A stretch of 64,000 nucleotides of DNA from NCBI GenBank assembly GCA_002269645.1, contig NIVC01000069.1, positions 62,001-126,000 on the forward strand. Reading direction: 5' to 3'. The DNA comes from Macrostomum lignano (Eukaryota). The notes beneath the pieces are model-generated. The model was given only the letters and a program-made list of their open reading frames with translations, did not search any database and was not told the origin of the DNA. Shown here one piece after another: positions 6,179 through 64,000 of this stretch. Made by a program: the position numbers and the translations under genes. Within the stretch, counting starts at the first letter, position 1. The number at the start of each line of letters is the position of its first letter.

Positions 6179-7515
6179 ACTGTGGCTATCCAGAAAGTTG
6201 AGATTAATTGAGCAAGAAAGAAGCAAATTATTGACATGGCACATATATAATCTCAATAATAACTCATATTTCTATGGTAAAAATTTTTGTCCTTCTAATA
6301 ACAAAATTAAGGGCAAGGGTAATCCTTAAATATCAAGTGCTCAATACAAATTTAATGCAGTGAATAGTGATCAAGCGTGCAAATTTTGATAATGATTTTT
6401 TTTAAATCAGACTAACTTTATAGAAGTTTGAGAAATAACAGTTCATGAATTTTTTCACTAAAGATTTGCACTTTCAAAAAGTTTCTGCTATCTGGGTTCC
6501 CTATATTTTCTCTTAGGAGAACAAATTTGTAAGCTTTTTTTTACAATAAGGGCATAGAAAAACATGTTCAACAAGTACAAGGAAGACAATGAAATATAGA
6601 TATACATTAACAACATTAGCATGAATTAAAACAATAAGTACTAGCTTGGCCAAGGAGATCATAGTGAAGTTTGAAAAGCTGCATTGCAGTAGGCTAAAGG
6701 CCTTAACAAAAACTGCTTAAAAAGAAAGGTTTAGTAACTTATTGACTTTTGTCAAGCTATAATCAATGCAAAAGAAGATCACATTTGCCAATTAATATTA
6801 TTATTAATATTATATTATATAGTATATTTTCTAATAGTTTTGACTACTTTTTTAAAAGAAATTTTTTTTCAAAACATTCTAGATAGCCAAAGAATTATAA
6901 TTTAGAAGTTGCTATTATTATAAGTAAAAATATTCAAAAAAACAGGGTCTGCAGTACACTATTTTAGTCTCTATGCTAAATATATAAGTTAAAAATCAAG
7001 TGACCCAGTCTATTGGGCCATTAGGCATCAGGCCTTCTATCCCCTTCCCCCTAAGTCTATTGACTATATTAACCCTAGTCTATTAGAGGTGCTAGTGCTA
7101 CCTTTTTTCTGCTAAGGCCTAGCTTGTCTAATAGATATTTATTAATGACTTATCCCCTTCTATATATTGCACAAATTAGAAACCTACTGAACTTTACTTG
7201 TCTCTTTAGCATGGAGTATATAAGCCAAAATATTTGTATGTAAGCAAAATAATAACTTTTTATTTTACTATACGTAAAATTTTATAAATTATGTATATAT
7301 ACTATATTTTTAATATTTAGGCCTAGTGACCTAAGTCTAAGTCCTAATAGTCTATAAAAAACAGACTAATATTAGCAAAAGTTAAAAGCTTTTAAAAAGC
7401 TTAAGTTAAGTAAGTTAAAAAGTAAGTTAAAAAGTTAAAAGTAAGTTAAAAAGCTTTTAATATTTTTTTATGTTACCTAAAATGGCCCTAGGAATCTTCT
7501 TAGTTGGGCAGTTGG

Positions 7516-7789
7516 CATACATGCGCAACCTCCAAAATTCGGTCGGCCGTGCGACTTAGTTTTAACAAAAATGCGACTTACATGTAAAAAAACCCTAAAG
7601 CAAAATTAACGCAACTTTGGGTAAACGGCAGGAGTAACTATGACTGTCTTATTAAGCCAAAATGCCTCGTCAGCTACTTAGTGCTACTACTTGGGTGTTT
7701 TTTCGGGTGGGCATTTTTGCGACTTCCTTGGTTGGCCACCAAATCAGTTGGCCGGATCGGCCGACTTGGCCGACTGTTGCGCATGTATG
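7516..7789. mobile_element. hAT-type MITE (274 bp)
   Basis: Perfect 14-bp TIR CATACATGCGCAAC and perfect 8-bp TSD GCAGTTGG (7508-7515 and 7790-7797). An 8-bp TSD with CA-starting TIRs is characteristic of hAT. Confidence 0.88.
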
Positions 7790-9488
7790 GCAGTTGGGCT
7801 TGCTCAAATGGTATATTTTCACATATTATAGGCCTAGCTTATTCCAGGCCTAAAAAGATGTTGATTTTTATTAGTTATAAAATAAGGTCAAGTTAAACTT
7901 GACCTGGTCAAGCAGTAGAAATCCAATATTTAATACAAATAATATTTGTATTATACAAATTTAATTTTACAAATTTACAATTTACATTATTTTTACAAAT
8001 TTACAATTTTACAAATTTACACAAAAATTAAATATATCCTGTTGCCATGTACTGACATTGAGAATTGTCACATTATCTGAATATATTTTGTTGCATCGAT
8101 TTATACACTTCGTCCGCCATATTTGCTGCAATTGACCTCCCAGCGTACTCCGTAAAGAGATATTCAATTTACTTCTTATAAAAGTAAACAATTAAACCGA
8201 GAAAAACACTATATTTAATTTGCTTAATATTCTATAGGTATTATTAGCTTACACTTATAATAGCTTTAAAAAAGTGTAAGCTGTTATACACTGTACTCTT
8301 TTGTTTTTTTTCTGTTTTTTTGTTATACAGGTAATTAGTTTTACATTAAAAAGATACAATTTCAAAAAATCTTAAAATATCGCGCGGGCGAAGCAGTGAG
8401 GTGAAGGTTTCGCCGCCGTTCAGGACTTCCGAGCCACGGGCACGGAGGACTTAAAAGTATTACTTTTGCAGATATACAGAGTGGAGTTTAGGCTTCTTAC
8501 AGAATGTACGCAGCTCATTTGACCTTAGTCAAGTTTGTTATTGTTTCATTAAGCCATATGCCATGATTTAATAAGATAAGACCTCTGCGATAGCGATAGG
8601 CGCAACCAAACATCGAAAAATTGATTGTTTTGCGTCACCCGTACGAGAACCTAAGAGTTTTCCTGTCGAAAAATAAAGAGCTATTTGTCAGCTAATTTTG
8701 ACACAGCAAAATCTTATTTTCTTTATTATATCAATGGTATCATGTGTTTAAATGGTGTATTATGTAATGATAATGTTATGTTATGTATATTCAGGATATG
8801 GATCCCACATTTTTAGGTTGTAAAACAGTAATGAAAGAGACTGGTGCAAGTAACTGCAAGTAATAAGGCTATAATGTTTTCAAATTTTCGCCATCGAAAA
8901 TATGTCAAATGTATTTCACTTTAGTTGATATCAATCTGCTATATCTTTGCTATCATAACTTGTATCTTAAGATTGTTGCTGACTTGGAAACTTGAATAAC
9001 GAAATCCTTTTGCAAGTTAGGATTAAAGAAAAAAATTGTAGAATAAATAGCTTTTCAAGATTTTTCTTGCTTAATTGTTTTTTATTTTATCAACTTATGC
9101 TGGCACTATTATGAACATGTAGGATAATAACCTAATTCATTATTTATCTAGCAGGTATTAGCTAGACTAATAATAAAAAAGCTTAATCTGATTTTATAGC
9201 GACTAAAAATCTTAAATCTTTATTTTTTGTCAAATAAATCTCAAGGCAATTTACAATTGCATTACAAACTATTTACACAGTCTTTTCATTACCTTCAAAT
9301 GACCACTTGACCATTGCAATGTTAAGACTTTTATTCACTTCAAAGATAAATAACGTTCATTTCAAGGCTAGCACACTCACTGCTTCTTATCTCAAAGCTT
9401 TACAGTCAATTGTATATTCACTTTTTATCTTGATCTGTAAAGCTTCAGAAAAATATACAAAGTATATATTGCAATTGAACTAAACGAA

Positions 9489-24500: not shown

Positions 24501-26074
24501 CAGAGTGGCTGCTGGTCGGGTCGCACTGCTGGGTCGACCTTGGGCTGGTGTACAGCGCCGGCGCAGCATCCTATCGCACCGCTGAAGGTCGTTGGGTACC
24601 GCGCCTGCAAGTCCGCCGTCAAGTCGCTGACCTCCGCGATTCCGGGCGGCTGCCCGCTAAGGTCGACTCGGAAGCCCAGCTTCTCCATCAGGTCTCTACC
24701 GACGATGTTGTCGCCGCCTGGCGCAACGAAGAACCGGTGCTGCATCGCCTTGTCGCCGTAGCGCACCTCCAGCTCGGTGACACCACTTAGCTGGATCGGC
24801 AGTCCACCGTAGGCACGCAGCTTCGTCGTAGTGGGAGAGGTGACTGCACCTGAGATCCGATCGGCGGTCTGTCGGGACAGCAGCGACACCCTTGCGCCGC
24901 AGTCCACCATCAGGCTGACAGCGGTCCTGTCCGGTCCGAGTTCCAGCGTCGCCCGGACCTCCCTGTCGCCACCTGACACTGTGTAGACTGTGATCACCTC
25001 GTCCGCGGCATTGACAGCAGCCTGCTGGCTGCGACAGCAACTCCGGAAGTGGTTCTTCTTGCCACAGGCGTCGCATGTCTTGCCCTTGGCCGGACAGGGG
25101 GTCGTCGGTCCGTGGTCTCGCCCACAGCGTGTGCAGGCGCCGCCGGGTTTGGCCGTCCTGCCAGCTGGTGCTGGGCGGTGCCTCCCCTTTGCAGCGACCT
25201 TCTGGCCCCTCGGCTGTCGGATCGATTGGACGGCTGCCGTGCTCGAGGTTGATGGCGCCATCGCCTTGGCTTCTTTGGAGGCTTCCTCGATGGAGACCGC
25301 GATGCTGAGCGCTTTCGCCAGGTTGAGGTCCTCCACCTTCTCCGTCAGCAGCCTCTCTCGGATTCTGGGGTTACTGGTCTTCTCAGCCAGCTGGTCTCTG
25401 ATGAGATCGTCCTGTATCGCGCCGTAGTTGCACAGCTCCGTCAGCTCCCTCAGGGCTGCCACGAAGGTCTTGACGTCCTCGCCGGGTAGCTGCTGGCGCT
25501 GGCGGAAGCGATATCTGGCCACCATCACGTTGGGCTTCTCGCCGAAGATCTTCTCGAGCTCCGCCTTAGTTGCTGCGAACGTGTCGTTCTCCTTGATTGC
25601 TTGGCGTGCTCGAGCAACCCGCTGACCTTCGAATCCAAGCAGATGGAGCAGAAGGCTCCTCTTCAGCGGTTTCGCCTCTTCCTTCCCTTCGGGCTCTTTG
25701 AATTGGGCCGCCTCGTAATAAAATTCAAAGGCCTCAATCCATCGGCTCCATGGTACTGTCGGTGATCCGCAGTTCGCCAGGAAGGGCGTGGGTGCAGGGA
25801 TGCTAGCCGCCATCCTCGTCGCCAATGTTCTGTTGTTGAATTAACGAACGCAGAAACAAGATAGATAATTATCCGGGCGCTCAGTGGCACCAAAAGAAGG
25901 GCTTGGCCAATAGGAGGGCGGCTCGTATATTTATGCACGCGGGGAAGGAAAGTTCTAGAAAGACCGGGGAAGGAAACTTCTGGAACTATGCGTAAACAAG
26001 TCCGCGGTGGAAGTTTCTAGAAACGCTGTCCCCGAACTACCCCTACGCCTCGCATGCCTTTGCAATACACAACA
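21545..26074 (-). mobile_element. Full-length Ty3/Gypsy LTR retrotransposon, Mag-like clade (4530 bp)
   Basis: Two 249-bp LTRs (21545-21793, 25826-26074), identical by eye, TG...CA; 5-bp TSD CCCAC; PBS TGGCGACGAGGATGG (25824-25810) complementary to the tRNA-Ser(GCU) 3' end; PPT GAAGGAGGGGAAGAA next to the 3' LTR. Confidence 0.98.
21842..25813 (-). CDS. Uninterrupted Gag-Pol polyprotein (Gag with tandem Zn knuckles, PR, RT, RNase H, IN)
   Basis: ATG lies inside the PBS (MAASIP); CTRCGRDH...CDACGKKNHFRSCC; PR LMVDCGA; RT KIDLKSGY, PFGLASAP, ILDD; RH TDAS, EREAL, TDH; IN HEGH...CVAC, VD...TDNG...ERLN; no env or chromodomain seen. Confidence 0.97.
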   Translation of the reverse strand: MAASIPAPTPFLANCGSPTVPWSRWIEAFEFYYEAAQFKEPEGKEEAKPLKRSLLLHLLGFEGQRVARARQAIKENDTFAATKAELEKIFGEKPNVMVARYRFRQRQQLPGEDVKTFVAALRELTELCNYGAIQDDLIRDQLAEKTSNPRIRERLLTEKVEDLNLAKALSIAVSIEEASKEAKAMAPSTSSTAAVQSIRQPRGQKVAAKGRHRPAPAGRTAKPGGACTRCGRDHGPTTPCPAKGKTCDACGKKNHFRSCCRSQQAAVNAADEVITVYTVSGGDREVRATLELGPDRTAVSLMVDCGARVSLLSRQTADRISGAVTSPTTTKLRAYGGLPIQLSGVTELEVRYGDKAMQHRFFVAPGGDNIVGRDLMEKLGFRVDLSGQPPGIAEVSDLTADLQARYPTTFSGAIGCCAGAVHQPKVDPAVRPDQQPLCRLPLMRQEQVGAELDKIEKNGIIERVNASEWVSNLVVTAKKDGSIRICVDVREPNKALIVDKHPMPQLDEIASKIKKGRGRVFSKIDLKSGYMQMQLHESSRNLTAFITHKGLFRYRRVPFGLASAPAAFQRMLDDQAADLDGVEHILDDFIVYGRSEEEHDRRLEKLLQRLEDKGMTVNKQKCAFKQKEVEFFGFVISEAGIRPTESATAAIRDIRQPGDQKALKSFLGAANFLMRFVPHYADITEPLRRLLKADSNFDWTPECQRAFEAVKDAISKAPTLAHFDPKADTIVTTDASAKAIGAQLSQIQDGVERPVAFAARALTTTEQRYAANEREALASLWAMEKWHFYLYGRHFELRTDHQALQQLLLGPTGTGHRPLRIHRWCDRLLQYDFHVHYLPGNSNYVADLLSRWSSGSELNLIHLPDTPGPRVKAVTLEALTAGTAADETLRTAIRSVISGRWPADIDDVELRALWKVREQLSVWNNGECLAFQERAVIPESLRGQLLEQAHEGHQGIVRTKQALRDSVWWPAMDKAVETFVRHCVACETAEKNFKVSPAPLKTIRWPDSPWAEIAVDIVGELQAAPASSRYLIVVTDLHSKWPEVIPTASITTETICRAMRSLFARWGLCEKVLTDNGPQFGSEFSDFLAEQGIRHVKTSLYHPQTNGQTERLNRSLLASIRAAMVENRPFQDAVTNFLSAYRSSKHSLTGKSPAELMLGRKWRTAITMLSPGGGMTTTEATPQALRQQIEARQQRIKAYTDARRRARPETFHPGDWVRIRRPTKKGKLGTRLSRPLQVLRQAGHHAVELSDGTRWNQQRLIRTPHPAQPRERFDPLVDSAPTTGAGTAAPAAPAAEPPARTAAPRRSERARHPPIRFMNCRWD

Positions 26075-27484
26075 CCCACCTAAGCGCTTCGTCTCTGTGG
26101 ATTCCTTGGCTACCGGCAGATAGGTCCTCTGATTGGTTTGGTGAGAGGCTCTCTTGACCTGCTTAACTGGGTGCACCCTTTGTCTGACCCCTTCCTAGGT
26201 AGTCTGGTAGGATTTGCACTTTTGCTTACTTGCTTTTGTGTGCCAATCTCGAGGCAGAAGTGTTAGTTAATATTAAAAGTAGCCATTTGCTCTAACTTAA
26301 TCTAAAGTGTTAAGGATTGCGGATTAAGTGAGAAAGTTAAATTTGGAAGTTAAAGACTTAGCGTTTTCTTTCTTTTTCGCAATGCCAGCTGAGATGAGCA
26401 GCTAAATCTAGAGGCAGAGGTCACGGTGGACCGGAAGCGGCACAGTTCCCAGTCAATCAGTCAATCTCAGAAATCATTATGTTAAGCATGCAAATTAAGA
26501 GCCAGACTGGCGCTTTGGCGCGGTCACAGGCAGTTAAGTGGCTAAAGTAAGTTAAATATTAGTCTAAAGATCTCCGAAAGTGACAATGCATCTACATCAT
26601 CGCTATCTGTCGACGTGTTAACACATTTAGTGCCAAAAGCGTGCAGTTACATGTACTTATACATGTACTTCTGGGAATTTGGTAATGAAATAGTACATTT
26701 AGTAGTGTATAGAGGCTCGCCAGCGCAAGAACTCCCTGCAAAAGTCCTCTCTGTCCCTGCATGGCCAATGCGATCTTAGTCCCAGCAGCGTCCCTTCTAT
26801 TCGGCTATGACTTCGAGATGGACAGCTAAAAGACACTAGATGGCAGGTAAGTGCAGTGCCCCTCTAGTCGGAAGTCCGATTTCGATAGCTCCGGTTTGGT
26901 GAGCCCGGGGCGCACGGACTGGTGGCAGCGGGTTAGTTAATCTGCGGATTAGCTAATCTCTACCTTTCAAATTCTCCCTGCTTGTCTCTCGCTGTCTCCT
27001 CCTAGCTATAGGACCTTGCTGCTCGCCCACAATCTAGCTACCATGGGGCTGACCATCTGACAGGAGTGAGAGGCCAGAGTTCTAAGTGATTCATTTCTGA
27101 ATTCTGAGGCCCGAAGCTACAGGCTTAAAAGGCCGAACCCATCACATGCGGTAAATGTACGTTGGGTAGAAACACTGGGATATTGGCAAAACTAATCCCA
27201 ATTTTTCTGGGTGTCTATTCTAGGTAGGTCTAAACAATCTGATGGAGAGCTCAGGAGCAGGAGTTGCTGCACCATATTATTCTGCAAGTTACAGCGAATG
27301 AATGAGTACTAAATTCTAGACTTACATGCAGTTTATTTCTAGCACTCTTATCTGAATATCAACAACACAAAACACAATCACAAAATGGCATAGCTTTACT
27401 AGCCTACTGTAAGTAGTACTCTTTGTGTTTCAATTGGGAAGCAATACTTAATGAAACACGAAAACTTGCTTCTAACCCACAAAT

Positions 27485-31850: not shown

Positions 31851-33450
31851 GTCCAGCAGTTGATTTTTGCCCACTGTCGAGGCTTGATCAGCGAAACTAG
31901 AGAAATCCGCATCAGGGTGTCCATAGTCACCTGGTGCCACAGCTGTTGAGGGTCCAGAAGCTCCATCTGGGTGAAGGCTAGTGACCAACGAAGTCAGAAC
32001 TGATGCAGACACATGTGGTCGACGTGCTGATGAAATTTGGAGACTTGGCAAGGCTGCACTGAGGCGCAGTGCTGATTGGCGCACAGGGGTGTACTGAATA
32101 CACTAGCGCTTATGGGAAAAATCCGACCTTCTGGCAGAATCGTCGAATATCTCGACGGTCCGAAGGGCTGGCGACTTGATTCTTGTTTGAGAAGGTGCGC
32201 AACAAAAAGTTAGCTCGTGTTCTTGAATTTCGTGTGCCTGCGTTGCTCCGTTCCGGCGCAGCAAAAAAAATTGTCAGGGGGGGGAAATTTCCCCCCCCCC
32301 TTGGTAGTTCTACTGTTAATAAATACATAACAGCAAGGAGTAAATGATCAAAAAGGAAAACATTCATTAAAACTAAAGTACCAGCTATACGAAAATAGTT
32401 CATAATAAATGTCACAGCTTGTGCAGTTCATCAGTTTGTAGTCGAAATTTGACAATGTGAAAATCAATTTGTCACCCAAAGTGAAACATGCAGTTCTCAA
32501 AGCCGCAGTTCCCAAAGATGCTCGACACTTTAGCCTGATGATTTGGCACTGCAAAAGGAGTTGGCCTATTTTGAATGTTTTCTATAAAAGAGAAATAACA
32601 GGTGCTTAAGTATAGTTACCGAACTTACCATTTGAAAGATGCACGTCTTGGTTGGCTTGCGACTGATAAGCTTCGTCTGATGAGCTTCTTTGGTACCGCA
32701 GTATCCAAGCTGGGATTCTTTGGGACTGTCGGCTGCTCGACTAAATCTATTGGCCGCTTTGAGACATCGCTTATAGCCGTCGAAGCGTTGAAGACTGCAT
32801 GGTCGAGTTTTCTTCCTAGGTAGCGCCGCACGGTTCGTTCAGTCGTTGACAGGAAGATTTTTCCAATTAATAAGCGCGGCTGTTTGACGAGATGCACCAG
32901 CCATGGTTGTTTGACAAGACAAATAGCTTTTTCTCTTACTACTCGCTTTTCTGATTTCTTACAAGACGCAAGCGAAATCAGCACTCATCGCAGTGTGTCT
33001 ATGGTCAAACTAAGACACACAACTCAGTGGTCTATGGGTAAAATAACTCTTAAAACAGCCAATTGAAGCACGATAAAAAAGTGTGGAATAATGACAGCGA
33101 CAAAAGTGTGGATATAAGAGTGAAAGTATAAGTACAATGCACTTGTATAGTATTCAACTCAGTTGCATACTATACAATCTACCATTGTAAGGTTTCTGAA
33201 TGTAAAATAAAATATGGTTTACAGCATCCATCAGCGCGTTGAAACTACTGCCGAGGGCCCTTCGAAAATAGCTAGCTAAGTAACAGTCTTCAGGAACCCG
33301 CGACCCAGGGACAACCTTAGTAGAAGGACGCTGCACTCGAATTTCTTAGACGTGACTGGGTGCGGTAAGAAACGTATATTATTTCTTCTCGAAGTGAATC
33401 TTCAGAGAACGATTTTAACATTTCCACGTCAACAAAGTCCTTTAACTAAC

Positions 33451-33964
33451 CTTCTTTCTGCATGATGAAGCGAAACTCGTGCGTGAGTCCGGTCTCAACG
33501 GCGGCCAGAGTGTCCGACAGGGCCAGGGCTGGCTGGCCAAGCCGCGGTCGCTTCCACCCTGTGCTTGGATCCGCGTTGGCAATGTCGAATAACAGAAAGT
33601 TCAACTTGCAGTTGGTATCGCAGTTGAGCAGGGAGTTGAGTTCCGGTGCTGCCGAGCTGTCTGTGAGCTTGCTAATTGACAAAACGTCGTTTGGACAGAA
33701 GTACACATCCGGGAAGCGATAGGCCAGCGACGTGGTCAGGGTGGTAAGCAGCGGCAGGCTGAAGAACCTGTCGAACAGGGTGTACATGTGATAAGCAAAA
33801 CCGCTGTAGGTGCCAATTAGAAAGGCCAACCAAATGACGCGACCGTAGGCGCTGCTCTGCGAACGGAACCGACCAAGGCCGTGCGCCGTAGTGTACTGGC
33901 AGAACTGCTTCAAGGCATGGATCGGTGCAGTTGGCTGATGTGCTTGATGTGCCTTCCCTTTCAT
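33451..33964 (-). CDS. DEG/ENaC (ASIC-like) channel, first coding exon only
   Basis: FCQYTTAHG (pre-TM1 HG motif), TM1 VIWLAFLIG, FPDVYFCPN; donor G|GTTAGT at 33450. The following exon is interrupted by a stop, and no Cys-rich or TM2 (GGxxGL) region was found. Confidence 0.75.
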
Positions 33965-35174: not shown

Positions 35175-35467
35175 TACTGAACTGTACTGGCCTATCCGTG
35201 ACAGTACAATGCATTAGGCCGAATTTTATCACTAGTAACAAACTACTTTTTCTTTTTTATGTATCGCATCTTAGCTAAAAGCAACGGAAAATCTCTGTTT
35301 TGACATAAAATCCGTAAAATACATTCTGTACGAATCTTTTTCATTCGATGCTGTTTTACCTGGTGAGTAGTTTGACTTACTGTGCGACTTTCATGATTTT
35401 GAACTAATAAGTCTACCTTTCAAAAAGCCTTGGCATAATATATAATAATAATTTAATTTATTACAAC

Positions 35468-35764
35468 TGTCCTAATTGGGCCAGATGTGCAACCGACAGC
35501 TCAGCCGCAGCTATTGCGCGGCGCATCTGAAGACTGCGTACGGCTGTTCAGTCCAAGGACTGGGGGGTCGCCACACACACCCTCAATTACCCCAGCTAAT
35601 GGTGGCACCCATTTTACAGCTGGGTGAAGTGAAGCAATGTATAGTTAAGTGTCTTTCTCAAGGACACACACTGTTCCAAGTGAGACGAGAATCGAACCCC
35701 TTCATGTCGGGAATCCGCGCTCTAACCACTAGCTTGCAACCCCTCTCACTAGGCTACAACCCCT
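35468..35764 (-). mobile_element. tRNA-derived CORE/Meta-type SINE, near full length
   Basis: Reverse complement matches the 60528-60830 copy across head, CORE and tail. Confidence 0.88.
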
Positions 35765-39412: not shown

Positions 39413-39906
39413 AGACGCTACACTTGATTCCAAAGTTTAGAGGAATAACTACGAACTTATATTGAGCCCTTACATTCTGTTAAACCTACTAGATGTATTT
39501 CATGCAATATTACTCAATTTTACTGTTCATTTACTCGCTTCACTTTGTACACAAATTGGAATTCTTCGAATTCAAACAGCAGAAAATGAGAGCTAGAATA
39601 TTTGAATGCTTTGGATACTTGTAGCTCGTATAATATTTAGCTCTTTTTCTCTGTCGACAAAAATTTATTTGTCATTCGACCACAAAGTGTTGCTTATACG
39701 CTCTTAAAAGCAAATTACTGAAGAATTATAAAAGATTCAACGATAGGAAAAGAATTTTGTAAAGATTTTCATATTTTCAATGGAACAGTTAAAATAATGT
39801 AATAGCATTAACAAGTATCCCAATCAGTTCTCGAGTTATCGTGGTGCTTTGCTCTTTGATCATCTCCAGCTCATCGGTTAGATCCAGCAGCTCCAAGCCA
39901 AGCCTC

Positions 39907-40662
39907 TCAGGTCAGGCCGAACTTCACCCAGTCAGCGCTCGTCTCGATCGCCTCCTCCACCTGAGCGTCAGTGAAGTGCAGCAGGCGGCATTTCTTTTGC
40001 TTCTTATTGAACAGCACGTGCTGGCTGTCCTTCGATCTCATCGCCATGGCAACGCACTCGATAGCGCTGTCGATGTTGGTCAGGTCAGTGAAGCAGTACT
40101 CAGAGCTGGGATTGTAGCTGGACCGCTTGAACGGAGTTCGCCTCCACTGGCCGTTGAGTTGGGCCGCAATCGGAGCAGCTGCATCGAACTCGCACGCGAA
40201 TCCGAATTTGTCAGAGCAGGAGAGGTCGACGACATTAGTGGAGCTTTCAAAGGTGCCTACGCAGTCCTGTTTTTCATCTTTATTGTTTGGGTCACCGGCG
40301 AACCAAAGAGAGTCATCGAGAGGCAGCTGGCCTCTGCCGAACACCATCTGCCAGCCCTCCCTGCTGGTGTTTCTCTCATCCGCCATGTCGGTCACTCCGA
40401 GCCAGTATTTATTTCCAGTTTGAAAACTCGGCATGCTGGGCAGCAGCTGCAGCGAGCCGTACGAGTTGATGAGCTCGCCACCGATCGATGAGCACTGCCG
40501 ATTGGCCTCGCACCAGGTGAAGCTCTGGGATGGGTTCACGAATATGCACCTGCCGGCCTCGATGTAGAAGGGAGCGGGGCACTGAGCCAGCACCGGCAGC
40601 AGTGAGCAGAGCAAACTCAAAATAATTTGAATAAATATTCGCACTGCGACTGACCGTTGCAT
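39907..40662 (-). CDS. Secreted C-type lectin (signal peptide, CTLD, degenerate PAN/apple-like C-terminus), intronless, copy 1
   Basis: Hydrophobic leader; CP...GRC; TWCEANRQC...GGEL; YWLG; WFAGDPNN...DC; DLSC...FACE; C-terminal YCF...EC...CRLL. Confidence 0.88.
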   Translation of the reverse strand: MQRSVAVRIFIQIILSLLCSLLPVLAQCPAPFYIEAGRCIFVNPSQSFTWCEANRQCSSIGGELINSYGSLQLLPSMPSFQTGNKYWLGVTDMADERNTSREGWQMVFGRGQLPLDDSLWFAGDPNNKDEKQDCVGTFESSTNVVDLSCSDKFGFACEFDAAAPIAAQLNGQWRRTPFKRSSYNPSSEYCFTDLTNIDSAIECVAMAMRSKDSQHVLFNKKQKKCRLLHFTDAQVEEAIETSADWVKFGLT

Positions 40663-46768: not shown

Positions 46769-46796
46769 CAAATCCAGCAGCTCCAAGCCAAGCCTC

Positions 46797-47552
46797 TCAG
46801 GTCAGGCCGAACTTCACCCAGTCAGCGCTCGTCTCGATCGCCTCCTCCACCTGAGCGTCAGTGAAGTGCAGCAGGCGGCATTTCTTTTGCTTCTTATTGA
46901 ACAGCACGTGCTGGCTGTCCTTCGATCTCATCGCCATGGCAACGCACTCGATAGCGCTGTCGATGTTGGTCAGGTCAGTGAAGCAGTACTCAGAGCTGGG
47001 ATTGTAGCTGGACCGCTTGAACGGAGTTCGCCTCCACTGGCCGTTGAGTTGGGCCGCAATCGGAGCAGCTGCATCGAACTCGCACGCGAATCCGAATTTG
47101 TCAGAGCAGGAGAGGTCGACGACATTAGTGGAGCTTTCAAAGGTGCCTACGCAGTCCTGTTTTTCATCTTTATTGTTTGGGTCACCGGCGAACCAAAGAG
47201 AGTCATCGAGAGGCAGCTGGCCTCTGCCGAACACCATCTGCCAGCCCTCCCTGCTGGTGTTTCTCTCATCCGCCATGTCGGTCACTCCGAGCCAGTATTT
47301 ATTTCCAGTTTGAAAACTCGGCATGCTGGGCAGCAGCTGCAGCGAGCCGTACGAGTTGATGAGCTCGCCACCGATCGATGAGCACTGCCGATTGGCCTCG
47401 CACCAGGTGAAGCTCTGGGATGGGTTCACGAGTATGCACCTGCCGGCCTCCAGGTTAAACGGAGCGGGGCACTGAGCCAGGACCGGCAGCAGTGAGCAGA
47501 GCAAAATCAAAATTGCCCGAATAAAGATATGATATAGTGGTGGGTCTTGCAT
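46797..47552 (-). CDS. Secreted C-type lectin, intronless, copy 2
   Basis: 251 aa, identical to copy 1 from VNPSQSF onward; N-terminal ~40 codons diverged. Confidence 0.88.
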   Translation of the reverse strand: MQDPPLYHIFIRAILILLCSLLPVLAQCPAPFNLEAGRCILVNPSQSFTWCEANRQCSSIGGELINSYGSLQLLPSMPSFQTGNKYWLGVTDMADERNTSREGWQMVFGRGQLPLDDSLWFAGDPNNKDEKQDCVGTFESSTNVVDLSCSDKFGFACEFDAAAPIAAQLNGQWRRTPFKRSSYNPSSEYCFTDLTNIDSAIECVAMAMRSKDSQHVLFNKKQKKCRLLHFTDAQVEEAIETSADWVKFGLT

Positions 47553-49019: not shown

Positions 49020-51005
49020 TGATGGGTTTCGACCTTCGGGCCCCTTGTTAGGAAGCCTTCGGGCCTCAGGCTCAGAAACAAATCACTTAGAGTCCTGGCC
49101 CCCCACTCCTGTCAGATGGTCAGCCCCATGGTAGCTTGATCGTGTGGCGAGCAGTCTAGGTCCTATAGCTAAGAGAGGGACAGCGAGAGACAAGCAGGGA
49201 GAATTTTGAAGGTAGAAATTAGCTCATCCGCAGACTAAGCTAACTCGCTGCCACCAGCCCGTGCGTCCTGGCTCACCACACCGGGACTCTCGAAATCGGG
49301 CTTCCGACTAGAAGGGGCTTTGCACTTACCTGCCAACTAGTGTCTTTTTGCTGTCAATCTCGAAGTCATAGCCGATGATAAGGGACACTGCTGGGACTAG
49401 ATCGCATTGGCCATGCAGGTACAGAGGGGACTTCTTGCAGTGGCGAGTCTATGGGGTAGCTACATGTACTATTACATTGCTAAATACGAAGATATGTACT
49501 TTTGGCCTTCAACGCGCCAACTAGCCTCTCATAGCGCTGATGATAGACTAACTCGAACTTCAGAGACCGCATAATTCATTACCCGAGCCGCTTGGCTAAC
49601 CTAGAGTGCACAAAGTACATCTCTGGCGCCGATTCTGCACTTCTGGCAGTTTTGCTCACTGATTTGATTGATTGATCGACTGAGAACCGCCTTGCCATTG
49701 GTCCACCGTGACCGGCGCCTACTAGCTTAGCTACTCATCTGAGCCATCGGCGAACAAAGAAATAAAACCTATAAAAATAACTGTCAGATTTAACCTTCTC
49801 CTTAGTTCACTTCACACTTCAGATTGAATTAGAGTTTTAGACAGCTAGCAGTATTATTGAATGATTTCTGCCTCAGCAACAGCACTACTGAACAAAATGA
49901 GCAAAAGTGTGCGCCTAATTCAGCTACTGAAACAGGGGACAGATAGGGAATCACCCAATCAAGCAAGTCTAGGTAGCCTCTCACCCAACCAATCAGAAAC
50001 TCAACAGCCGGAGACCAGGTAATCCACAGTGACCGAATCGGCTTGATGCTCTGCAGCTGTAGACTCGGGATGATGCTGTCACAATCTTCGCAGATAGCTA
50101 GCAGGTGGTGATCTTAACTTTGATGTTCGCTGCTGATGACCGGGGGACTCGTCCTTGATGATGATGGGGGGGAAGTCGCAATCCGGGGATCAAGAAACGA
50201 CGGTCGCGCTCCGGGATGTCCCAAGCTAGGCTAAGGTCCCAGGAGGTGAGCGCAAGTTGAGGTCCGAGCGGGCCAAAAACTCCGGTTTAAATAGCCGCCA
50301 ACTGGACCGCAGTTTGTTATAATGGAACACGTCGATTCTGATTGGCCGAGCCGTTTTGTTAAAATGAGCGCCGAATTTTCTGATTGGCTAAGCTTGTTGC
50401 TACCCAGAATCACGTGACCGAGAGATCCTATCAGTTCCCACAGGGTCGTAAAAATATGACAGGTGCGGCCATAAATCACTCAAAATCGCAACAAAATGAT
50501 TTATGACTTTTCGCGTAGGATTGACAGAAATTAATGAAAAAATATACATTAGAAAGCTCTTATTAAATAGAAAGTGAAGATAATGAAGAGAAATTGCTAA
50601 TCGCTAATCCCAAGGTACTTTTAGGGGTAAAACGCATAGCTGTCAAAGCTGTCACACGCTTGAGTGAATCCGAACAATAGGCTCTGACCTCATAAATCTT
50701 GATGACCTGTCAAAATGATGAGAAAAAAGCTACCGCCCGCATCCTCTCAGACCATCTGGCGCCCGTCTCAACACTGAGTGAGACGCAGGTGGCTGTCAGA
50801 CCAGCTTCGAAAGCGATGATTTATGACCCAAAAAGCTATGCCTATGTTATTATGACTACTAGTATGGCCAGACATTATATCTAGTATAGATTCTATGACA
50901 ATTTGCAGAAAAAGGATAAAAATGCCCCTTGCCCACTGTTAGTAGGCAAGTAAGTTTAGAGCCCATGTGCTAGCGCGGGATTTGGGAAAAAGTGCGTCCT
51001 CATCA
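49020..51005 (-). mobile_element. ~2.0-kb solo LTR (copy 2, 1986 bp) of the same family as 20588-27144
   Basis: TGATG...CATCA termini; 4-bp TSD GAAG (49016-19 and 51006-09); collinear blocks with copy 1 including CCAAT boxes, the TGATTTATGGCCGCACCTGTCA site (50478-50457) and a GGCAG|GTAAGTG donor. Confidence 0.88.
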
Positions 51006-57285: not shown

Positions 57286-60200
57286 ATGCGGGTATGCATC
57301 ATAGGCGCAGGTGTCAGCGGTCTAGTCAGCATCAAAGCCTGCTTAGAAGAGGCTGAGCAATTTCAGCCAGTCTGTTTCGAGCGCACCAACGATATTGGCG
57401 GTTTGTGGCGATTTCGAGAAGACGATGGACAGGCATGCGTGATGCGGTCAACTGTGATCAACACTAGCAAGGAAATGATGGCTATCAGTGACTTTCCACC
57501 CAGCTCGTCTTATCCGAACTTTATGCACAACAGTCAGGTGCAGCAGTACCTGAGAGACTATGCCGACAAGTTCAATTTGAGGCAGTACATTCAGTTCCGT
57601 CATACTATTGAGAAGGTGGAGAAATGTCCAGATTTCAACTCTACCGGACAGTGGATTGTCACGGTGAAAGACGACCAGTCTGGTGTAAGTCGTACCGAGA
57701 CATTTGGCGCTGTGCTGGTGTGTGTCGGTCACCATGCCAACCCTCACGTGGCCAGCTTTGCTGGATTAGATGCGAACTTCCAAGGCCAGGTGTTCCATCC
57801 GCACAGTTATCGCGACTGCACAGGTGACAATTTCAAAGGCAAGCGCGTGCTCATTGTTGGGATTGGCAATTCGGGCGGCGATCTGGCTGTCGAATTGAGT
57901 CGGGTGGCCTCTCAGGTAGGTTGAAGTTTTGGTTCGGTTTCTTAGAAAATTATTTTTTGAAGGCTGGTTTTACATAAATATATAGATTAGCTAGAAAAAT
58001 GACAACATTGAGTTTGTTTGTTTGAATAGACACGCATGTATTTATATGGTATTTACTAAGGTATATGCTTTACAACGATCGACTGCTACAACTCAACTGC
58101 TTAACCTAACTATACCTAACCTAACCTAAACCCTACCTAAACCCTACCTTAAACCCTACTCTGAACCCTATTCTAAATCCTATCCTAAACCGTCACCTAA
58201 ATCCTATCCTAGAACCTGATTCCTAAACCCTACCCTAAATCCTATCCTAAACCCTACTCGTACCCTAAATCCTATCCTAAACCCTACCCTAAACCCTATC
58301 CTAAACCGTCACCTAAATCCTATCCTAAACCCTGATTCCTAAACTCTACCCTAAGCCCTATCTAAAGCCCTATCTTAAACCCAAATTCCTGAACTCACCT
58401 TAACACCTTAAACCGTATCCTAAACCCTACCAAAACGCTATCCTAAAGATTTAACATGCATTGTAATAAGAGATTCTGTTTTCGCGTTCGCATTAAAACC
58501 AGCCTTAATTATAAAGCTAGGTTAGGTTTCCACCATTCAACTAAAGCTTTGTCATGCTTTTTAAGTGTGGTCACCTAAATTGGTGGTCTGTGACACTATA
58601 TATATACATATAGGCTTGTGCATTGTCTGCAGCAATACTCATATACACTTTCCGTGCTCGCTCCACTTATGGTTAAGAACACTTCATTACTTTTTTTAAC
58701 AGCATCTGTGCCCCAGCTCAAATATGCTATTTTGCTTTTAGTTAGAAAACTATTTCCTGACGCTGTGCAATTTCTCTGCGAGTGCCTGCCTGTCTGTCTG
58801 TCTTTTTGTTTTCTTGACAGAGCAGCGTTAGGTTAGCTTTTCTTTCCACTGTTTTTTCAAGAAGTTTCCGACTCTGCATACACATGCACATGTATTGCTG
58901 TCGGGTATCTCGGATACGCTCACTTTCTATAACTGTACTATAAGTGCAGTTAGCATTTTATATAGAAACTTGTACAGTATTACTAGCCATCACAGAATGT
59001 CTATTGCAGTATAATTATTAGTGATCACCTCAGAGCATTACTCACCCTTCCTAACCTTTATGACCTGAATACATCTCAGATTCTCTCACCCCATATGACC
59101 TCTGAAACTGTCACCCTCGCTGCCCCCTCTCTGACCACTTCTCGCCCTCTCTGACCCCCTCTCACCCTCTCTGACCCCCTTTTAGCCTCTCTGACCCCCT
59201 CTCACCCTCTGACACCCTCTCTGACTCCCTTTCACCCTCTCTGACCTCTTCTCACCCCCTCTGACCCCTTTTACCCTCTCTGACACCCTCTCACCCTCTC
59301 TGACACCCTCTCTGACACCCTCTCACCCTCTCTGACACCCTCTCACCCTCTCTGACACCCTCTCTGACCCCCTCTCACTCTCTGACACCCTCTCTGAGCC
59401 TCTCCTTATAATTACCCACTCGTGTTTGGTTAGTGCATTGGATCTATAGCACCAACATCCTCTCTGTACAAACAGGTATTCTTAAGCACTCGCCGAGGCA
59501 CCTGGCTATTCAAAAGAATCCTAGACAATGGCTTGCCAATTGACTTGTTGATAACCAGGCGCTGGTTAATGAAACTGGCCTACTCTTTGCCGCAGTCATT
59601 GGTTAACGCCAAAATGTGCATGCTTGGGCGCAAACTAGGGATTCGCCCGGCCGTTTCTATTGGCGGCACACACATGTAAGTCGCTATTGGACAGAATATT
59701 GGTCACGTGACTGCTCTCAGCCAATAGCGACTTACATGTGTGTGTTGCCAGTGGAGACGGCCGGGTGATTCCCAAGGTTGCGCATGTATGAAAATGCGTA
59801 GCGATATTAATCACGTGATTGATCACCGGCTGTACTCACTGGAGCCCGAGCACGAGCCTATGGCCGCGCATCCTACGGTTAATGACGATTTGCCAAATAG
59901 AATTATCTGCGGCTCTGTTAAAGTGAAAACCGATGTTAAACAGTTCACAGGTTAGTAAAATGGCTTGTATTCGTAAAGTATCTTAGACACAAGTGAGACA
60001 CTCTGAGATGCATTTGAGACACTCTGAGATGCATTTGAGACACTTCTGAGATGCATTTGAGACACTCTGAGATGCATTTGAGACACTCTGAGATGCATTT
60101 GAGACACTCTGAGATGCATTTGAGACACTCTGAGATGCATTTGGAGACACTCTAAGATGCATTTAAGACACTCTGAGATGCATTTGAGACACTCTGAGAT

Positions 60201-62100
60201 GCATTTGAGACACTCTGAGATGCATTTGAGACACTCTGAGATGCATTTGAGACACTTCTGAGATGCATTTGAGACACTCTGAGATGCATTTGAGACACTC
60301 TGAGATGCATTTGAGACACTCTGAGATGCATTTGAGACACTCTGAGATGCATTTGGAGACACTCTAAGATGCATTTAAGACACTCTGAGATGCATTTGAG
60401 ACACTCTGAGATGCATTTGAGACACTCTGAGATGCATTTAAGACACTCTGAGATGCATTTGAGACACTCTGAGATGCGTTTGAGACAATTCTGAAAGCTG
60501 GAAAGTTTTTTAGTTTAAAAATTTCTGAGAGGGTTCTAGTCTAGTGGTTAGAGCGTCGGACCCACAACTGAAAGGTCGGGGGTTCGATTCTCGACCCACT
60601 CGGAACAATTGTGTCCTGAGCAAGACACTTAACTCTGCATTGCTTCAGCTCACCCAGCTGTAAAATGGGTGCCAGCATTAGCTGGGGTAATTGAGGGTGT
60701 GTGGCGACCCCCCAGTCCTTGGACCGAACAGCCGTACGCAGCGTTCAGATGACTGCGGCTATACGCTGCGCAATAGCTGCGGCTGAGCTGTCGGTTGCAC
60801 ATTTGGCCAAATTAGGGCAGGTGTAATCAGTTATGTAGCGTTATTAGTTTTTAAGCTAATCTTATCTCTTTAGTCTTTCATTGTAAATCTCAGGCCTAAT
60901 TTGGGGGGGGGGCTGCTACCCGAATATTAAAGCACGACTTCGCATCCTAATTGACTTGCACTTTCCAGCCACCGGCTGCGAATTCGTTGACGGCACCGTC
61001 GAGGACAATCTGGACGTTGTTACGAGTATCGTTGCCACCGGTTACAAATTCTCGTTTCCATTCCTGCCGGAAGATGTGATTTCGGTAGTTGACAACAGGC
61101 TGGACCTGTACAAGTACGTGTTTCCGCCCAAACTGGAACGGTCAACCCTGGCTTTTATTGGCTACGTGCAACCGCTTGGCGCTCTGCACCCGATCTCTGA
61201 GGGTCAGGCCAGATGGGCCGTCCAGGTGTTCAAAGGCATGGCACCGCTGCCAACTGCCGAAGCTATGCTAGCGGATGTGGAAGCTAAGCGAACGGCTATG
61301 GCTAGTCGATATGTGAAAAGTCCGAGGCATACTATTCAGGCAAATAGGTGTTATTTATTATTGACACTGTACAGAAGTTACCTTAGGCTTTGGCCGATAT
61401 TTAGCGTGAAAATCTTTATGCAATAAAGAAAGTAGTTCATATTTTGACTTCTTCAAATTTTGCCGATATGTAGTGTAACAATTTTCTTAAATTAAAAAGC
61501 CGTTCTTCATAAATTAATTTCTCACCGATATGTAGCGTAAAAATCTTTATGCATTGCAAAAAGCATTTCTCTTCGAGCTTCCGTTAATGTCGCCGATATG
61601 TAGCGTAAAAGGCTTTATGCATTGAAAAAAAGCCATTTCCTTCTCGAGCTTCCCTTAATGTCACCGATATGTATTCATAGTGTAAAAACTAAGTTGTGTA
61701 TATTGAAGAATTCCATTCGTATTCTCTGATTTCTCACCGATATGTTGAGTACCAATTATAACTGCCCGCATTCCAGGTGGACTGGGTTCCCTACATGGAC
61801 GAAATTCACGAGCAGTTTGGCGCCAGACCCAATATGCTGCGCCTGTGGCTCAGCGATCCCCGATTAGCCAGCAGTGTTTGGTTCGGTCCCTGCCTGCCCT
61901 ATCACTATCGGCTGGACGGTCCGCACGCTTGGCCGGGCGCCAGGGAGGCTATTCTTAACGTGTGGGACCGGGTTCGAGCCCCGCTAGCTACTAGGCCGCT
62001 GCCGCCGGCTCCTAGCGCTAATGGGTCGTTTGGCAGCATCCTCTGTTTAGTGGCGATTGCTGGAGTGCTGCTGGCAGTGCTTGTTCTGCTGTGGCGTTGA
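57286..62100 (+). CDS. FMO: Flavin-containing monooxygenase (FMO5-like). Exons 57286-57915, 59476-59950 (interrupted by a MITE at 59619-59790), 60969-61339, 61777-62100
   Basis: FAD motif IGAGVSG, FMO motif FQGQVFHPHSY, NADPH motif GIGNSG, STRRGTW, PTVNDDLPNRI, VATGY, QPLGA, HTIQ|VDWVPYMDE, C-terminal TM anchor; the last intron needs a GC donor. Confidence 0.92.
58105..58450. repeat. Degenerate telomere-like (CCCTAAA/CCTAA) tract in FMO intron 1
   Basis: CCTAACCTAACC grading into CCCTAAACCCTATCCTAAA variants. Confidence 0.75.
59090..59400. repeat. CT-rich low-complexity tandem repeat (CTCTCTGACACC)n
   Basis: Direct reading. Confidence 0.85.
59619..59790. mobile_element. hAT-type MITE (172 bp) inserted in FMO coding sequence
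   Basis: Right end is the reverse complement of CATACATGCGCAAC (same TIR as 7516-7789); left TIR degenerate; inner arms CACACATGTAAGTCGCTATTGG pair perfectly; 8-bp TSD AAAATGTG / AAAATGCG. Confidence 0.88.
59990..60490. repeat. 21-bp minisatellite (GAGACACTCTGAGATGCATTT)n in an FMO intron
   Basis: Direct reading. Confidence 0.95.
60528..60830 (+). mobile_element. tRNA-derived CORE/Meta-type SINE, near full length
   Basis: A box CTAGTGG, B box GGTTCGATTC, GAGCAAGACACTTAAC...CTGTAAAATGGG, tail ending GGGCAGGTGTAATCA. Confidence 0.9.
61385..61745. repeat. Degenerate tandem repeat built on CCGATATGTAGCGTAAAAATCTTTATGC in the last FMO intron
   Basis: About 5-6 recurrences of CCGATAT(G)TAG. Confidence 0.7.
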
Positions 62101-62134
62101 CTGCTGCTAGAATGATGCTGAGAGTGCTAAGCAG

Positions 62135-62620
62135 GGGTGAGATTTAGGGTGAGATGAGCTGAGATACTGTCTCATGCAGTGAGTTGTAGGTTGAGATTAA
62201 CAGATACTGTCTTATGGGGTGAGATTTGGATTGACATAAATAGAAATACTGTCTCATAGGGTGAGATCTAGGATGAGATGAACGGAGATACTGTCTCATT
62301 GTGGTGAGATCTAGGGTGAGATGAACGGAGATACTGTCTCATTGGGGTGAGATCTAGGGTGAGATGAACGGAGATACTGTCTCATTGGGGTGAGGTCTAG
62401 GGTGAGATGAACGGATATATTCGAATACTGTCTCATGCGGTGAGTTTAAGGGTGAGATGAACAGGGATACTGTTTTATAGGGGTGAGATCTAGGGTGAGA
62501 TGAAGGGAAGTACTAATCCAGGGGGAGATCTATGGTGAGATGAACAGAGATACTGTCTCATGGGATGAGATCTAGGGTGAGATGAACAGAGATGCTCTGT
62601 CATGCGGTGAGATTTCGGAA
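62135..62620. repeat. ~40-bp degenerate minisatellite (GGGTGAGATCTAGGGTGAGATGAACGGAGATACTGTCTCATT)n
   Basis: Direct reading. Confidence 0.85.
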
Positions 62621-63189: not shown

Positions 63190-64000
63190 CTACTGTCTCA
63201 TCTCACTCTATCACTCTCCTCATATCCCTCACTGTCTCCTCTCCTCGCCTCACCTCTCCTTTTCTCTGATCTCCCCTCTCACAGTGTCTCCTCTCCCATC
63301 TCACTCTCTCATTGTCTCTTCTCTCATCTCTCCCTCTCACTGTCTCTCTTCTCCCATCTCCCTCTCTCTGCCCCTTCCATCTCCCCCTCTCACTGTCTCG
63401 CATCTCCCTCTCACACTGTCTCTTCTCTCATCACTCCCTCTCACCGTCCCATCTCCCTTTCTCACTATCTCCCTCTCTCACTATCTCTCCCTATCACTGT
63501 TCTTCTCTCCCATCTCCCTTTCTCACTGTCTCTCCTCTCCCATCTCCCTTTCTCACTGTCTCTCCTCTCCCATCTCACTTTCTCACTGTCTCTTCTCCCA
63601 TCTCCCTCTCTCACTGTCTCTCGTCTCCCATCTCCCTTTCTCACTGTCTCTCCTCTCCCATCTCCCTCTCTCACTGTCTCTCCTCTCCCATCTCCCTTTC
63701 TCACTGTCTCTTCTCTCATCTCTCCCTCTCACTGTCTCTCGTCTCCCATCTCCCTTTCTCACTGTCTCTCCTCTCCCATCTCCCTCTCTCACTGTCTCTC
63801 CTCTCCCATCTCCCTTTCTCACTGTCTCTTCTCTCATCTCTCCCTCTCACTGTCTCTCGTCTCCCATCTCCCTTTCTCACTGTCTCTCCTCTCCCATCTC
63901 CCTTTCTCACTGTCTCTTCTCTCATCTCTCCCTCTCACTGTCTCTCGTCTCCCATCTCCCTTTCTCACTGTCTCTCCTCTCCCATCTCCCTCTCTCACTG
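63190..64000. repeat. CT-rich ~28-bp minisatellite (CTCCCATCTCCCTTTCTCACTGTCTCTC)n, runs off the window end
   Basis: Direct reading. Confidence 0.93.

What the first reader, a model, noticed from the sequence alone, without database searches (positions are those of the whole stretch)
59611..59802. hAT MITE inside an FMO exon that may be spliced out in frame: candidate newborn (introner-like) intron
Seen: removing the 172-bp element plus one TSD restores LVNAKMRSDINHVIDHRLYSLEPEH, collinear with the FMO5-type sequence as I recall it. Unspliced, the insert is in frame but contains TAA (59677-79). The left TSD differs from the right by one C>T (AAAATGCG vs AAAATGTG), creating a GT exactly at the boundary. 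Splicing AAAAT|GT...AG|C (59616-59801) is in frame and loses only 2 codons. A stronger GTAAGT donor inside the TIR arm (59676) is in the same phase and would add 20 TE-derived codons. The left TIR has decayed relative to the 7516 copy, while all flanking FMO exons remain open. Inference: the insertion is not brand new, and the gene may be rescued by intronization of a DNA transposon. Weak point: the acceptor lacks a polypyrimidine tract.
Basis: partly seen in the sequence, partly recalled or inferred. Interest (0 to 1): 0.82.

Follow-up and report, generated by a model that had tools for sequence, protein, structure and literature searches.

The report
Transposon insertion breaking an FMO gene exon
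A 172-base miniature transposon sits in the middle of a coding exon of an otherwise intact animal flavin monooxygenase gene; it is most likely a recent gene-breaking insertion, because the sequence gives little support for the idea that it is spliced out as a newborn intron.

Summary
A 172-bp palindromic element (59619-59790) with 8-bp target-site duplications (AAAATGTG/AAAATGCG) interrupts exon 2 of a four-exon FMO5-like gene. Removing it restores a 539-aa protein that matches Pfam FMO-like end to end.

The intron reading is not supported by the sequence, though it is not excluded.
- Donor 59616 and acceptor 59801 score like random GT/AG, far below seven real introns in the window.
- The GTAAGT at 59676 is part of a repeated transposon motif and lies buried in an ~80-bp RNA stem.
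- No branch-point-like motif precedes the acceptor.
- Most in-frame products change a mid-helix segment whose length is fixed in 101/101 homologues.

Some facts keep the idea alive. The coding sequence shows no decay. The duplications differ at one base. All 7 transitions between the arms form G·U pairs in the sense transcript.

Best reading: a recent, possibly polymorphic, loss-of-function insertion (~0.6). Functional intronization is ~0.2. RNA-seq or RT-PCR would decide. "hAT" rests on the 8-bp duplication alone.

The parts
57286..57915 (+). FMO exon 1 (ATG to CAG|GTAGGT), 210 codons
   Evidence: tblastn with a recalled FMO5 sequence used as a lead. Sequence and model. Pfam FMO-like on the assembled protein.
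59476..59610 (+). FMO exon 2, part upstream of the insertion (acceptor ACAG|GTA)
59611..59618 (+). Left target-site duplication AAAATGTG, carrying the C>T difference that makes a GT at 59616
59619..59790 (.). 172-bp palindromic miniature DNA transposon. Left TIR is degenerate and right TIR is intact. Arms are ~80-86% identical. Sense RNA forms an ~80-bp stem.
59677..59679 (+). First in-frame stop (TAA) inside the insert. It overlaps the GTAAGT donor-like motif at 59676-59681.
59725..59727 (+).
59791..59798 (+). Right target-site duplication AAAATGCG
59799..59950 (+). FMO exon 2, part downstream of the insertion (donor CAG|GTTAGT). The candidate acceptor GTAG|C ends at 59801.
60969..61339 (+). 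FMO exon 3. It ends at CAG|GCAAAT, so intron 3 is inferred to be GC-AG from exact collinearity with homologues.
61777..62100 (+). FMO exon 4, with the C-terminal hydrophobic helix and the TGA stop
7508..7797 (.). Second element of the same terminal family (7516-7789, 274 bp) with a perfect 8-bp duplication GCAGTTGG at 7508-15 and 7790-97. It lies in AT-rich non-coding DNA. It shares with the FMO copy only the 14-16-bp TIR and GCGACTT subterminal motifs.

Best explanation
A non-autonomous cut-and-paste DNA transposon has inserted into exon 2 of a single-copy (within this window) FMO5-like monooxygenase gene of an unidentified animal. The element is a 172-bp palindromic MITE that makes 8-bp target-site duplications. 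Its superfamily is unassigned; hAT is the commonest fit for 8 bp. The insertion lies in codons for the middle of an alpha-helix.

The allele in this assembly is most likely a recent, possibly polymorphic or heterozygous, loss-of-function allele. The primary transcript keeps the insert, translation stops at TAA 59677, and the message is probably degraded. Occasional cryptic splicing may occur, but it is not an evolved rescue.

Shown: the insertion, the duplications, the stops, the intact remainder of the gene, the weak splice signals and the RNA hairpin.
Inferred: that the insertion is recent, and the fate of the transcript.
For: Transposon nature:
- Two independent copies have 8-bp duplications and share a 14-16-bp TIR.
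- The GCGACTT motif occurs 5 times within the two elements, out of 14 occurrences in 64 kb.

Gene disruption:
- There are two in-frame stops.
- No second copy of exon 2 exists in the window.
- Skipping exon 2 (295 nt) would shift the frame.

Recency:
- The remaining 539 codons are open.
- The repaired protein matches Pfam FMO-like at 654 bits over residues 2-536.
- The AlphaFold model has pLDDT 91.
- It has 9 mismatches at columns conserved in >=95% of homologues. This is typical of equally isolated homologues, which have 6-15.

Against rescue by splicing:
- The candidate donor and acceptor score like random sites compared with 7 real introns in the window.
- The only strong donor is inside the stem, with unpaired probability 0.0.
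- The strongest internal pair, 59676-59751, shifts the frame.
- No branch-point motif is present.
- The -2 and +18 products change a segment that is length-invariant in 101/101 homologues and lies mid-helix.

Prior: introners were found in only two animal groups among 835 animal and plant genomes (PMC9860276).
Against: - The duplications differ at 1 of 8 positions and the left TIR carries 3 substitutions plus a 2-nt indel. If these arose after insertion, the insertion is not very young. Under neutrality, an intact 1617-nt ORF together with a duplication mismatch has joint probability of only ~2-4% at best.
- If the ~15% difference between the arms were post-insertional, a neutral ORF would almost certainly be broken (P about 1e-5 to 1e-8).
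- All 7 transitions between the stem arms form G·U pairs in the FMO-sense RNA (two-sided p = 0.016). The sense hairpin is 27 kcal/mol more stable than the antisense one.
- A GC-AG option of exactly 180 nt would preserve protein length, and the gene already uses one GC donor.
- No RNA or population data could be examined.
Confidence: 0.6

Rival explanations
1. Newborn intron. The element is removed from the pre-mRNA by the spliceosome using sites at or next to the duplications: 59622-59801 GC-AG (exact length), 59616-59801 GT-AG (-2 codons), or 59676-59801 (+18 codons). The long hairpin would bring the two ends together. The FMO would remain functional and under selection.
For: - In-frame options exist.
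- The ORF is intact and shows a normal level of conservation, despite a duplication mismatch and a decayed left TIR.
- 7 of 7 arm transitions are G·U in the sense RNA, as expected if the transcript's hairpin were being preserved.
- Transposon-derived introns, including ones whose inverted repeats pair to bring the ends together, are documented (PMC11282704; PMC12130899).
Against: - The donor and acceptor are indistinguishable from random GT/GC and AG in the locus. All 7 real introns in the window have much stronger sites and CAG acceptors.
- There is no polypyrimidine tract (6 of 16 pyrimidines) and no branch-point motif. The branch region lies inside the stem.
- The GTAAGT is a transposon motif occluded in double-stranded RNA.
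- Four transversions and an indel break pairing in the outer 25 bp, exactly where end-apposition would matter.
- No other copy sits in an intron-like position in the window.
- Introners are rare in animals.
Confidence: 0.2
2. Leaky null allele. Most transcripts are aberrant, but a minority are cryptically spliced using several sites in and around the element, as with maize Ds1 insertions. This gives residual or altered FMO without any selection for it.
For: - The locus offers several weak in-frame and out-of-frame GT/GC...AG pairs (50 in-frame combinations).
- Classical examples exist of Ds1, which I recall as a hAT-family element with 8-bp duplications, being spliced from exons. They are cited in the reference list of PMC3260210.
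Against: - The same weak-signal and hairpin arguments apply.
- The strongest donor/acceptor pair shifts the frame.
- There is no RNA evidence.
Confidence: 0.12
3. Old pseudogene next to an intact paralogue outside the window.
For: - FMO families are multi-copy in many invertebrates; several species have multiple hits.
- The arms differ by ~15%.
Against: - There are no stops or frameshifts in 539 codons. The expected number of disabling changes is 5-18 at 4-7% divergence.
- Conservation at invariant columns is normal.
- Splice sites of all three real introns are intact.
Confidence: 0.04
4. Assembly artefact or somatic insertion in the sequenced individual.
For: None specific.
Against: - The junctions are clean, with 8-bp duplications.
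- A duplication mismatch and a decayed TIR are not expected for an artefact or a somatic event.
Confidence: 0.03

Closest known systems
Ordinary exonic MITE / DNA-transposon insertion alleles (null or hypomorphic)
   Same: A short TIR element with target-site duplications interrupts a coding exon and introduces stop codons, and the rest of the gene is intact.
   Different: Nothing essential differs. Unusual details are the in-frame length (180 nt), one duplication mismatch, and the G·U-only transitions in the hairpin.
Maize Ds1/dSpm insertions spliced from exons (Dennis 1988 and Wessler 1991, as cited in PMC3260210)
   Same: A non-autonomous element with 8-bp duplications sits in an exon. Donor-like sequence lies in the element arms. 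Removal would be imprecise and would change a few codons.
   Different: Those cases were shown by cDNA; here no RNA evidence exists. This is an animal gene. The donor-like site is buried in an ~80-bp stem.
Introner elements (Micromonas, Aureococcus, dinoflagellates, fungi; PMC9860276, PMC12130899, review PMC11282704)
   Same: A MITE-like DNA transposon with TIR and duplication sits inside coding sequence. The idea is that the duplication contributes a splice site.
   Different: Introners occur as many similar copies that are verified introns. They carry one good splice site at an end and co-opt the other from the duplication, so that excision restores the ORF. Here there is a single exonic copy, both candidate sites are weak, no GT-AG removes exactly 180 nt, and only a weak GC-AG does.
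MITE-derived non-canonical introns of Fritillaria borealis and nonconventional introns of euglenids (PMC11282704)
   Same: Pairing of the inverted repeats would bring the two ends of the insert together in the RNA.
   Different: Those lineages have a changed or additional splicing system and many such introns. All 7 introns mapped in this window are conventional GT-AG or GC-AG.

Membership tests
Flavin-containing monooxygenase (Pfam PF00743, FMO5-like) | Full-length match to the family profile, with FAD and NADPH GxGxxG motifs and the FMO motif | tested here: met
   The repaired 539-aa protein scores 654 bits over residues 2-536 of profile positions 3-530/532. It is gap-free against AncFMO5 residues 211-308. 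The best homologues are ~55% identical. The model has pLDDT 91.
Class II MITE (non-autonomous TIR transposon) | Terminal inverted repeats, target-site duplication of fixed length, small size, no ORF, and more than one copy | tested here: met
   Two copies (172 and 274 bp) have 8-bp duplications and share a 14-16-bp TIR and GCGACTT subterminal motifs.
hAT superfamily | 8-bp target-site duplication | tested here: met
   AAAATG(T/C)G and GCAGTTGG. Other superfamilies also make 8-bp duplications (P, and some Mutator and Merlin; from my own knowledge).
hAT superfamily | Terminal consensus YARNG and target preference nTnnnnAn (both recalled from the literature) | tested here: not met
   The termini begin CATAC. 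Neither duplication has T at position 2 or A at position 7. The consensus is from memory, so this counts as a lead.
hAT superfamily | A related autonomous element encoding a hAT transposase | not testable with these tools
   The genome is not available. No hAT transposase appeared among the ten large ORFs scanned. Two metagenome scans for the family found nothing.
Introner / introner-like element | The element is removed from mature mRNA as a spliceosomal intron | not testable with these tools
   No transcript-derived or same-species protein was found among 5.8 billion clusters. Exact-protein look-ups were empty.
Introner / introner-like element | Many similar copies forming introns in unrelated genes | tested here: not met
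   This holds within the window only. The single other copy lies in AT-rich DNA where no coding exon was seen (not tested as an intron) and shares only the termini. A genome-wide test was not possible.
Introner / introner-like element | The element end plus the duplication supply competent splice sites, so that excision restores the reading frame | tested here: not met
   No GT-AG removes exactly 180 nt. The only exact option is a weak GC-AG, CAT|GCTTGG...GTAG|C. Site scores are far below those of 7 real introns. No branch-point motif is present.

The most novel reading that the evidence does not exclude
This could be a nascent spliceosomal intron in an animal gene, created by a palindromic MITE. 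The ~80-bp RNA hairpin would loop out the insert and bring together very weak sites in or beside the target-site duplications. An example is the exact-length GC-AG intron 59622-59801. The hairpin would be kept by selection in the sense transcript, which would explain why all 7 arm transitions are G·U-compatible while the FMO coding sequence stays intact.
Probability: 0.15. Interest if true: 0.8.

Novelty: new member of a known kind. Interest (0 to 1): 0.35.

Why it matters
If the insert is simply a null allele, this is routine: one more transposon-disrupted detoxification gene, useful mainly as a marker of a recently active MITE family.

If transcripts prove to remove it in frame, it would be a rare snapshot of intron birth from a DNA transposon in an animal. 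The published surveys read here found such elements in very few animal lineages. It would also give a testable case of an RNA hairpin substituting for splice-signal strength.

One inexpensive experiment separates the two readings: RT-PCR across exons 1-3, plus empty-site genotyping.

Tried and rejected
1. Looking for transcript-derived or annotated proteins of this gene.
- The exon-2 peptide found only one hit, at 61% identity.
- The full protein found nothing above ~60% identity.
- AMP-deaminase exons from the same window found nothing above 81%.
- The species is therefore absent from the database and could not be identified beyond 'metazoan, probably bilaterian'.

2. Exact-protein look-ups for the exon-1 ORF, a lectin ORF and the retrotransposon ORF were all empty.

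3. Two metagenome scans for the element family gave 0 hits. No family consensus could be built, so arm differences could not be polarised or dated.

I replaced it with tblastn using a recalled FMO5 sequence as a lead, and verified the result afterwards with Pfam and PDB.

5. CpG-decay explanation for the duplication C>T change. CpG observed/expected is 0.82-0.91, so hypermutable CpG is not a strong argument in this genome.

6. Rfam. There were no matches at gathering thresholds. The hairpin gives only sub-threshold generic miRNA-precursor hits.

7. U12-type signals: none.

8. Relaxed-constraint test. The apparent excess of mismatches (9 against a median of 2) disappears when compared with equally isolated homologues.

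9. A-to-I editing of both stops (UAA and UAG to UGG) in the long duplex was considered. I rejected it as a rescue because it would leave a 60-aa insert in a length-invariant helix. This is inference only.

Full report
**Observation**

The window holds a 172-bp element at 59619-59790. It is flanked by AAAATGTG (59611-18) and AAAATGCG (59791-98).
- Its right terminus is the exact reverse complement of CATACATGCGCAAC.
- That 14-mer occurs only three times in 64 kb, against 0.41 expected by chance. The other two occurrences are the two ends of a 274-bp element at 7516-7789, which has its own perfect 8-bp duplication GCAGTTGG.
- The two elements share the 14-16-bp termini and a subterminal heptamer, GCGACTT. 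That heptamer occurs five times within their 446 bp and only nine times in the rest of the window.

This is a genuine family of miniature cut-and-paste transposons that make 8-bp duplications.

Assignment to hAT rests on the 8-bp duplication alone. The termini begin CATAC, which does not fit the YARNG consensus I recall for hAT, and the two target sites do not fit nTnnnnAn. I therefore leave the superfamily open.

**The gene**

I located the exons by tblastn with a recalled FMO5 sequence, used only as a lead, and refined the model by reading the junctions.

| Exon | Coordinates | Boundary notes |
|---|---|---|
| 1 | 57286-57915 | ATG start; donor CAG\|GTAGGT |
| 2 | 59476-59950 | contains the insert; donor CAG\|GTTAGT |
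| 3 | 60969-61339 | donor CAG\|GCAAAT |
| 4 | 61777-62100 | TGA stop |

- Intron 3 is inferred to be GC-AG because only that junction keeps RHTIQ|VDW collinear with homologues.
- With the insert and one duplication removed, the gene encodes 539 aa.
- That protein matches Pfam FMO-like in one stretch (654 bits, residues 2-536).
- The repaired exon 2 aligns without gaps to ancestral FMO5 residues 211-308.
- The protein models with mean pLDDT 91.
- The best homologues, from molluscs, hemichordates and lancelets, are ~55% identical.
- No same-species protein exists in the databases searched (look-ups). The organism stays unidentified and no transcript evidence could be reached.

**What the insert does to the message**

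- The 180 nt are in frame but carry two stops, TAA 59677-79 and TAG 59725-27.
- No spare copy of exon 2 is present in the window.
- Skipping exon 2 would shift the frame.

**Can it be spliced out?**

I also found a 180-nt GC-AG option, 59622-59801. It would keep the length exactly and change KMRSD to KMCID.

The signals, however, are poor. I scored sites with a generic donor/acceptor matrix. The frequencies are recalled from published human data, so the absolute values are only a guide. As controls I used seven real introns mapped in this window, three from the FMO gene and four from the AMP deaminase gene.

| Site | Score | Comparison |
|---|---|---|
| Real donors (7) | 4.1 to 6.7 | controls |
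| Real acceptors (7) | -0.8 to +7.2 | all are CAG |
| Donor 59616 (AAT\|GTGCAT) | -1.7 | 21% of all GT in the locus score at least as well |
| GC donor 59622 (CAT\|GCTTGG) | -3.0 | scored on flanking positions only, ignoring +2 |
| Acceptor 59801 (GTAG\|C) | -9.9 | 84% of all AG score at least as well; 6 of 16 pyrimidines upstream |

Further points against splicing:
- No yUnAy branch-point motif lies 15-45 nt upstream of 59801.
- The GTAAGT at 59676 scores 5.3, but it is part of the transposon's GCGACTTAC motif.
- In the sense RNA that GTAAGT is fully paired with ACTTAC at 59730, inside an ~80-bp stem (-127 kcal/mol, z = -13.9, unpaired probability 0.0).
- The strongest donor/acceptor pair inside the element, 59676-59751, removes 76 nt and shifts the frame.

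**Would the products work?**

- The 15-residue segment VNAKMRSDINHVIDH has the same length in 101 of 101 full-length homologues.
- It lies in the middle of helix 250-264 of a confident model.
- The -2, +18 and +33 products would therefore be unprecedented in the family. Only the weak GC-AG option preserves the length.

**How old is the insertion?**

Three signs suggest some age:
- The duplications differ at 1 of 8 positions.
- The left terminus differs from the family terminus by three substitutions and a 2-nt indel, while the right terminus is perfect.
- The arms differ at 11 positions plus one indel over ~72 aligned stem positions.

Against any long period of decay:
- The coding sequence has no disabling change.
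- Its 9 departures from columns conserved in >=95% of homologues are typical of equally isolated homologues, which have 6-15.

I then used a neutral model with this coding sequence. In it, 3.5% of substitutions create stops, and I assumed an indel:substitution ratio of 0.05-0.12. The joint probability of an intact ORF together with at least one duplication mismatch peaks at about 2-4%, at 0.2-1% divergence. At 4-7% divergence an intact neutral ORF is essentially impossible.

So there is mild tension with a neutral pseudogene, but it is not decisive, for three reasons:
- A duplication mismatch can arise during gap repair at insertion.
- The arm differences may predate insertion.
- The left/right asymmetry of terminal decay fits uniform neutral decay poorly under either hypothesis.

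Without other family copies I could not polarise these changes. Two metagenome scans for the family found none.

**An unexplained detail**

- All seven transitions between the stem arms form G·U pairs in the FMO-sense RNA and A·C mismatches in the antisense RNA. The two-sided binomial p is 0.016, or 8 of 9 if two poorly aligned loop positions are counted.
- The sense hairpin is 27 kcal/mol more stable than the antisense one.
- The inner ~48 bp of the stem contain only such wobble changes. The four transversions and the indel are confined to the outer ~25 bp.
- Possible causes are transcription-associated C>T and A>G bias on the coding strand after insertion, selection to keep the hairpin in the transcript, or an intrinsic property of the source copy.
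- The first two causes would imply an older insertion, and therefore a gene still under selection. This is the main reason I keep the intron hypothesis at ~0.2 rather than lower.

**Comparison with known systems**

- Transposon-derived introns are well documented (PMC9860276, PMC12130899, review PMC11282704).
- They are defined by many similar copies that are verified introns. Typically one competent splice site is carried by the element and the other comes from the duplication.
- They were found in only two animal groups among 835 animal and plant genomes.
- The present case fails the criteria that can be tested here. The criterion of removal from mRNA cannot be tested.
- Hairpin-assisted apposition of the ends recalls Fritillaria and euglenid MITE-derived introns. 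All seven introns mapped in this window are conventional.

**Verdict**

It is a MITE in an FMO exon, and it may not be brand new. The case for a newborn intron is not supported by the sequence signals and remains untested.
- The most likely reading is a recent loss-of-function insertion allele (0.6). Functional intronization is at 0.2, leaky cryptic splicing at 0.12, and old pseudogene or artefact at under 0.1 together.
- RT-PCR or RNA-seq across exons 1-3 and empty-site genotyping would settle it.

Noticed in passing
window 61340-61776: FMO intron 3 appears to be a GC-AG intron (CAG|GCAAAT ... TTCCAG|G). Only this junction keeps RHTIQ|VDWVPY collinear with homologues. The intron also holds ~68-bp tandem repeats at 61522-61673.
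   Followed up: partly
window 59619-59790: All 7 transitions between the two arms of the palindromic element form G·U pairs in the FMO-sense RNA (sense -127 kcal/mol against antisense -100). Transversions and the indel are confined to the outer ~25 bp. The cause is unknown.
   Followed up: partly
window 21541-26074 (-): An apparently intact, young Ty3/gypsy-type LTR retrotransposon. It has a 1327-aa ORF with protease, RT, RNase H and integrase domains. Its LTRs at 21541-21793 and 25822-26074 are 99.6% identical.
   Followed up: partly
window 39882-40623 and 46772-47513 (-): Two 98.9%-identical copies of a 251-aa C-type-lectin-domain ORF lie ~6.9 kb apart, indicating a recent segmental duplication.
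   Followed up: partly
window 58120-58447 (FMO intron 1): A degenerate telomere-like array with CCCTAA-containing 12/24-bp units lies inside intron 1.
   Followed up: no
window 59994-60487, 59111-59404, 62134-62613, 63262-64000, 2090-3260, 3767-4833, 11203-11781, 14250-14830: The window has a very high density of minisatellites, for example a 21-bp unit repeated 23 times at 96% identity in FMO intron 2. Many of them create long spurious ORFs.
   Followed up: no
window 35460-35748 and 60526-60827: A ~300-bp dispersed repeat (84% identity, inverted) is shared between FMO intron 2 and a site 25 kb upstream. Another pair lies at 26736-27116 and 49057-49440. Both are probably other transposon families.
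   Followed up: no
window ~11834-16000 (+), 5163-5708 (-), 33446-33964 (-), 18974-19831 (-): Other genes and remnants in the window: an AMP deaminase gene (five exons and four GT-AG introns mapped), a PCMT (isoaspartyl methyltransferase) exon, an amiloride-sensitive sodium-channel (ASC) exon, and a weak, below-threshold Tc1/mariner-like transposase remnant.
   Followed up: partly
FMO residue 141 (window ~57706-57708): Gly replaces an Asp that is invariant in 101/101 homologues (FDAV becomes FGAV). The overall count of such departures is normal for an isolated lineage.
   Followed up: partly
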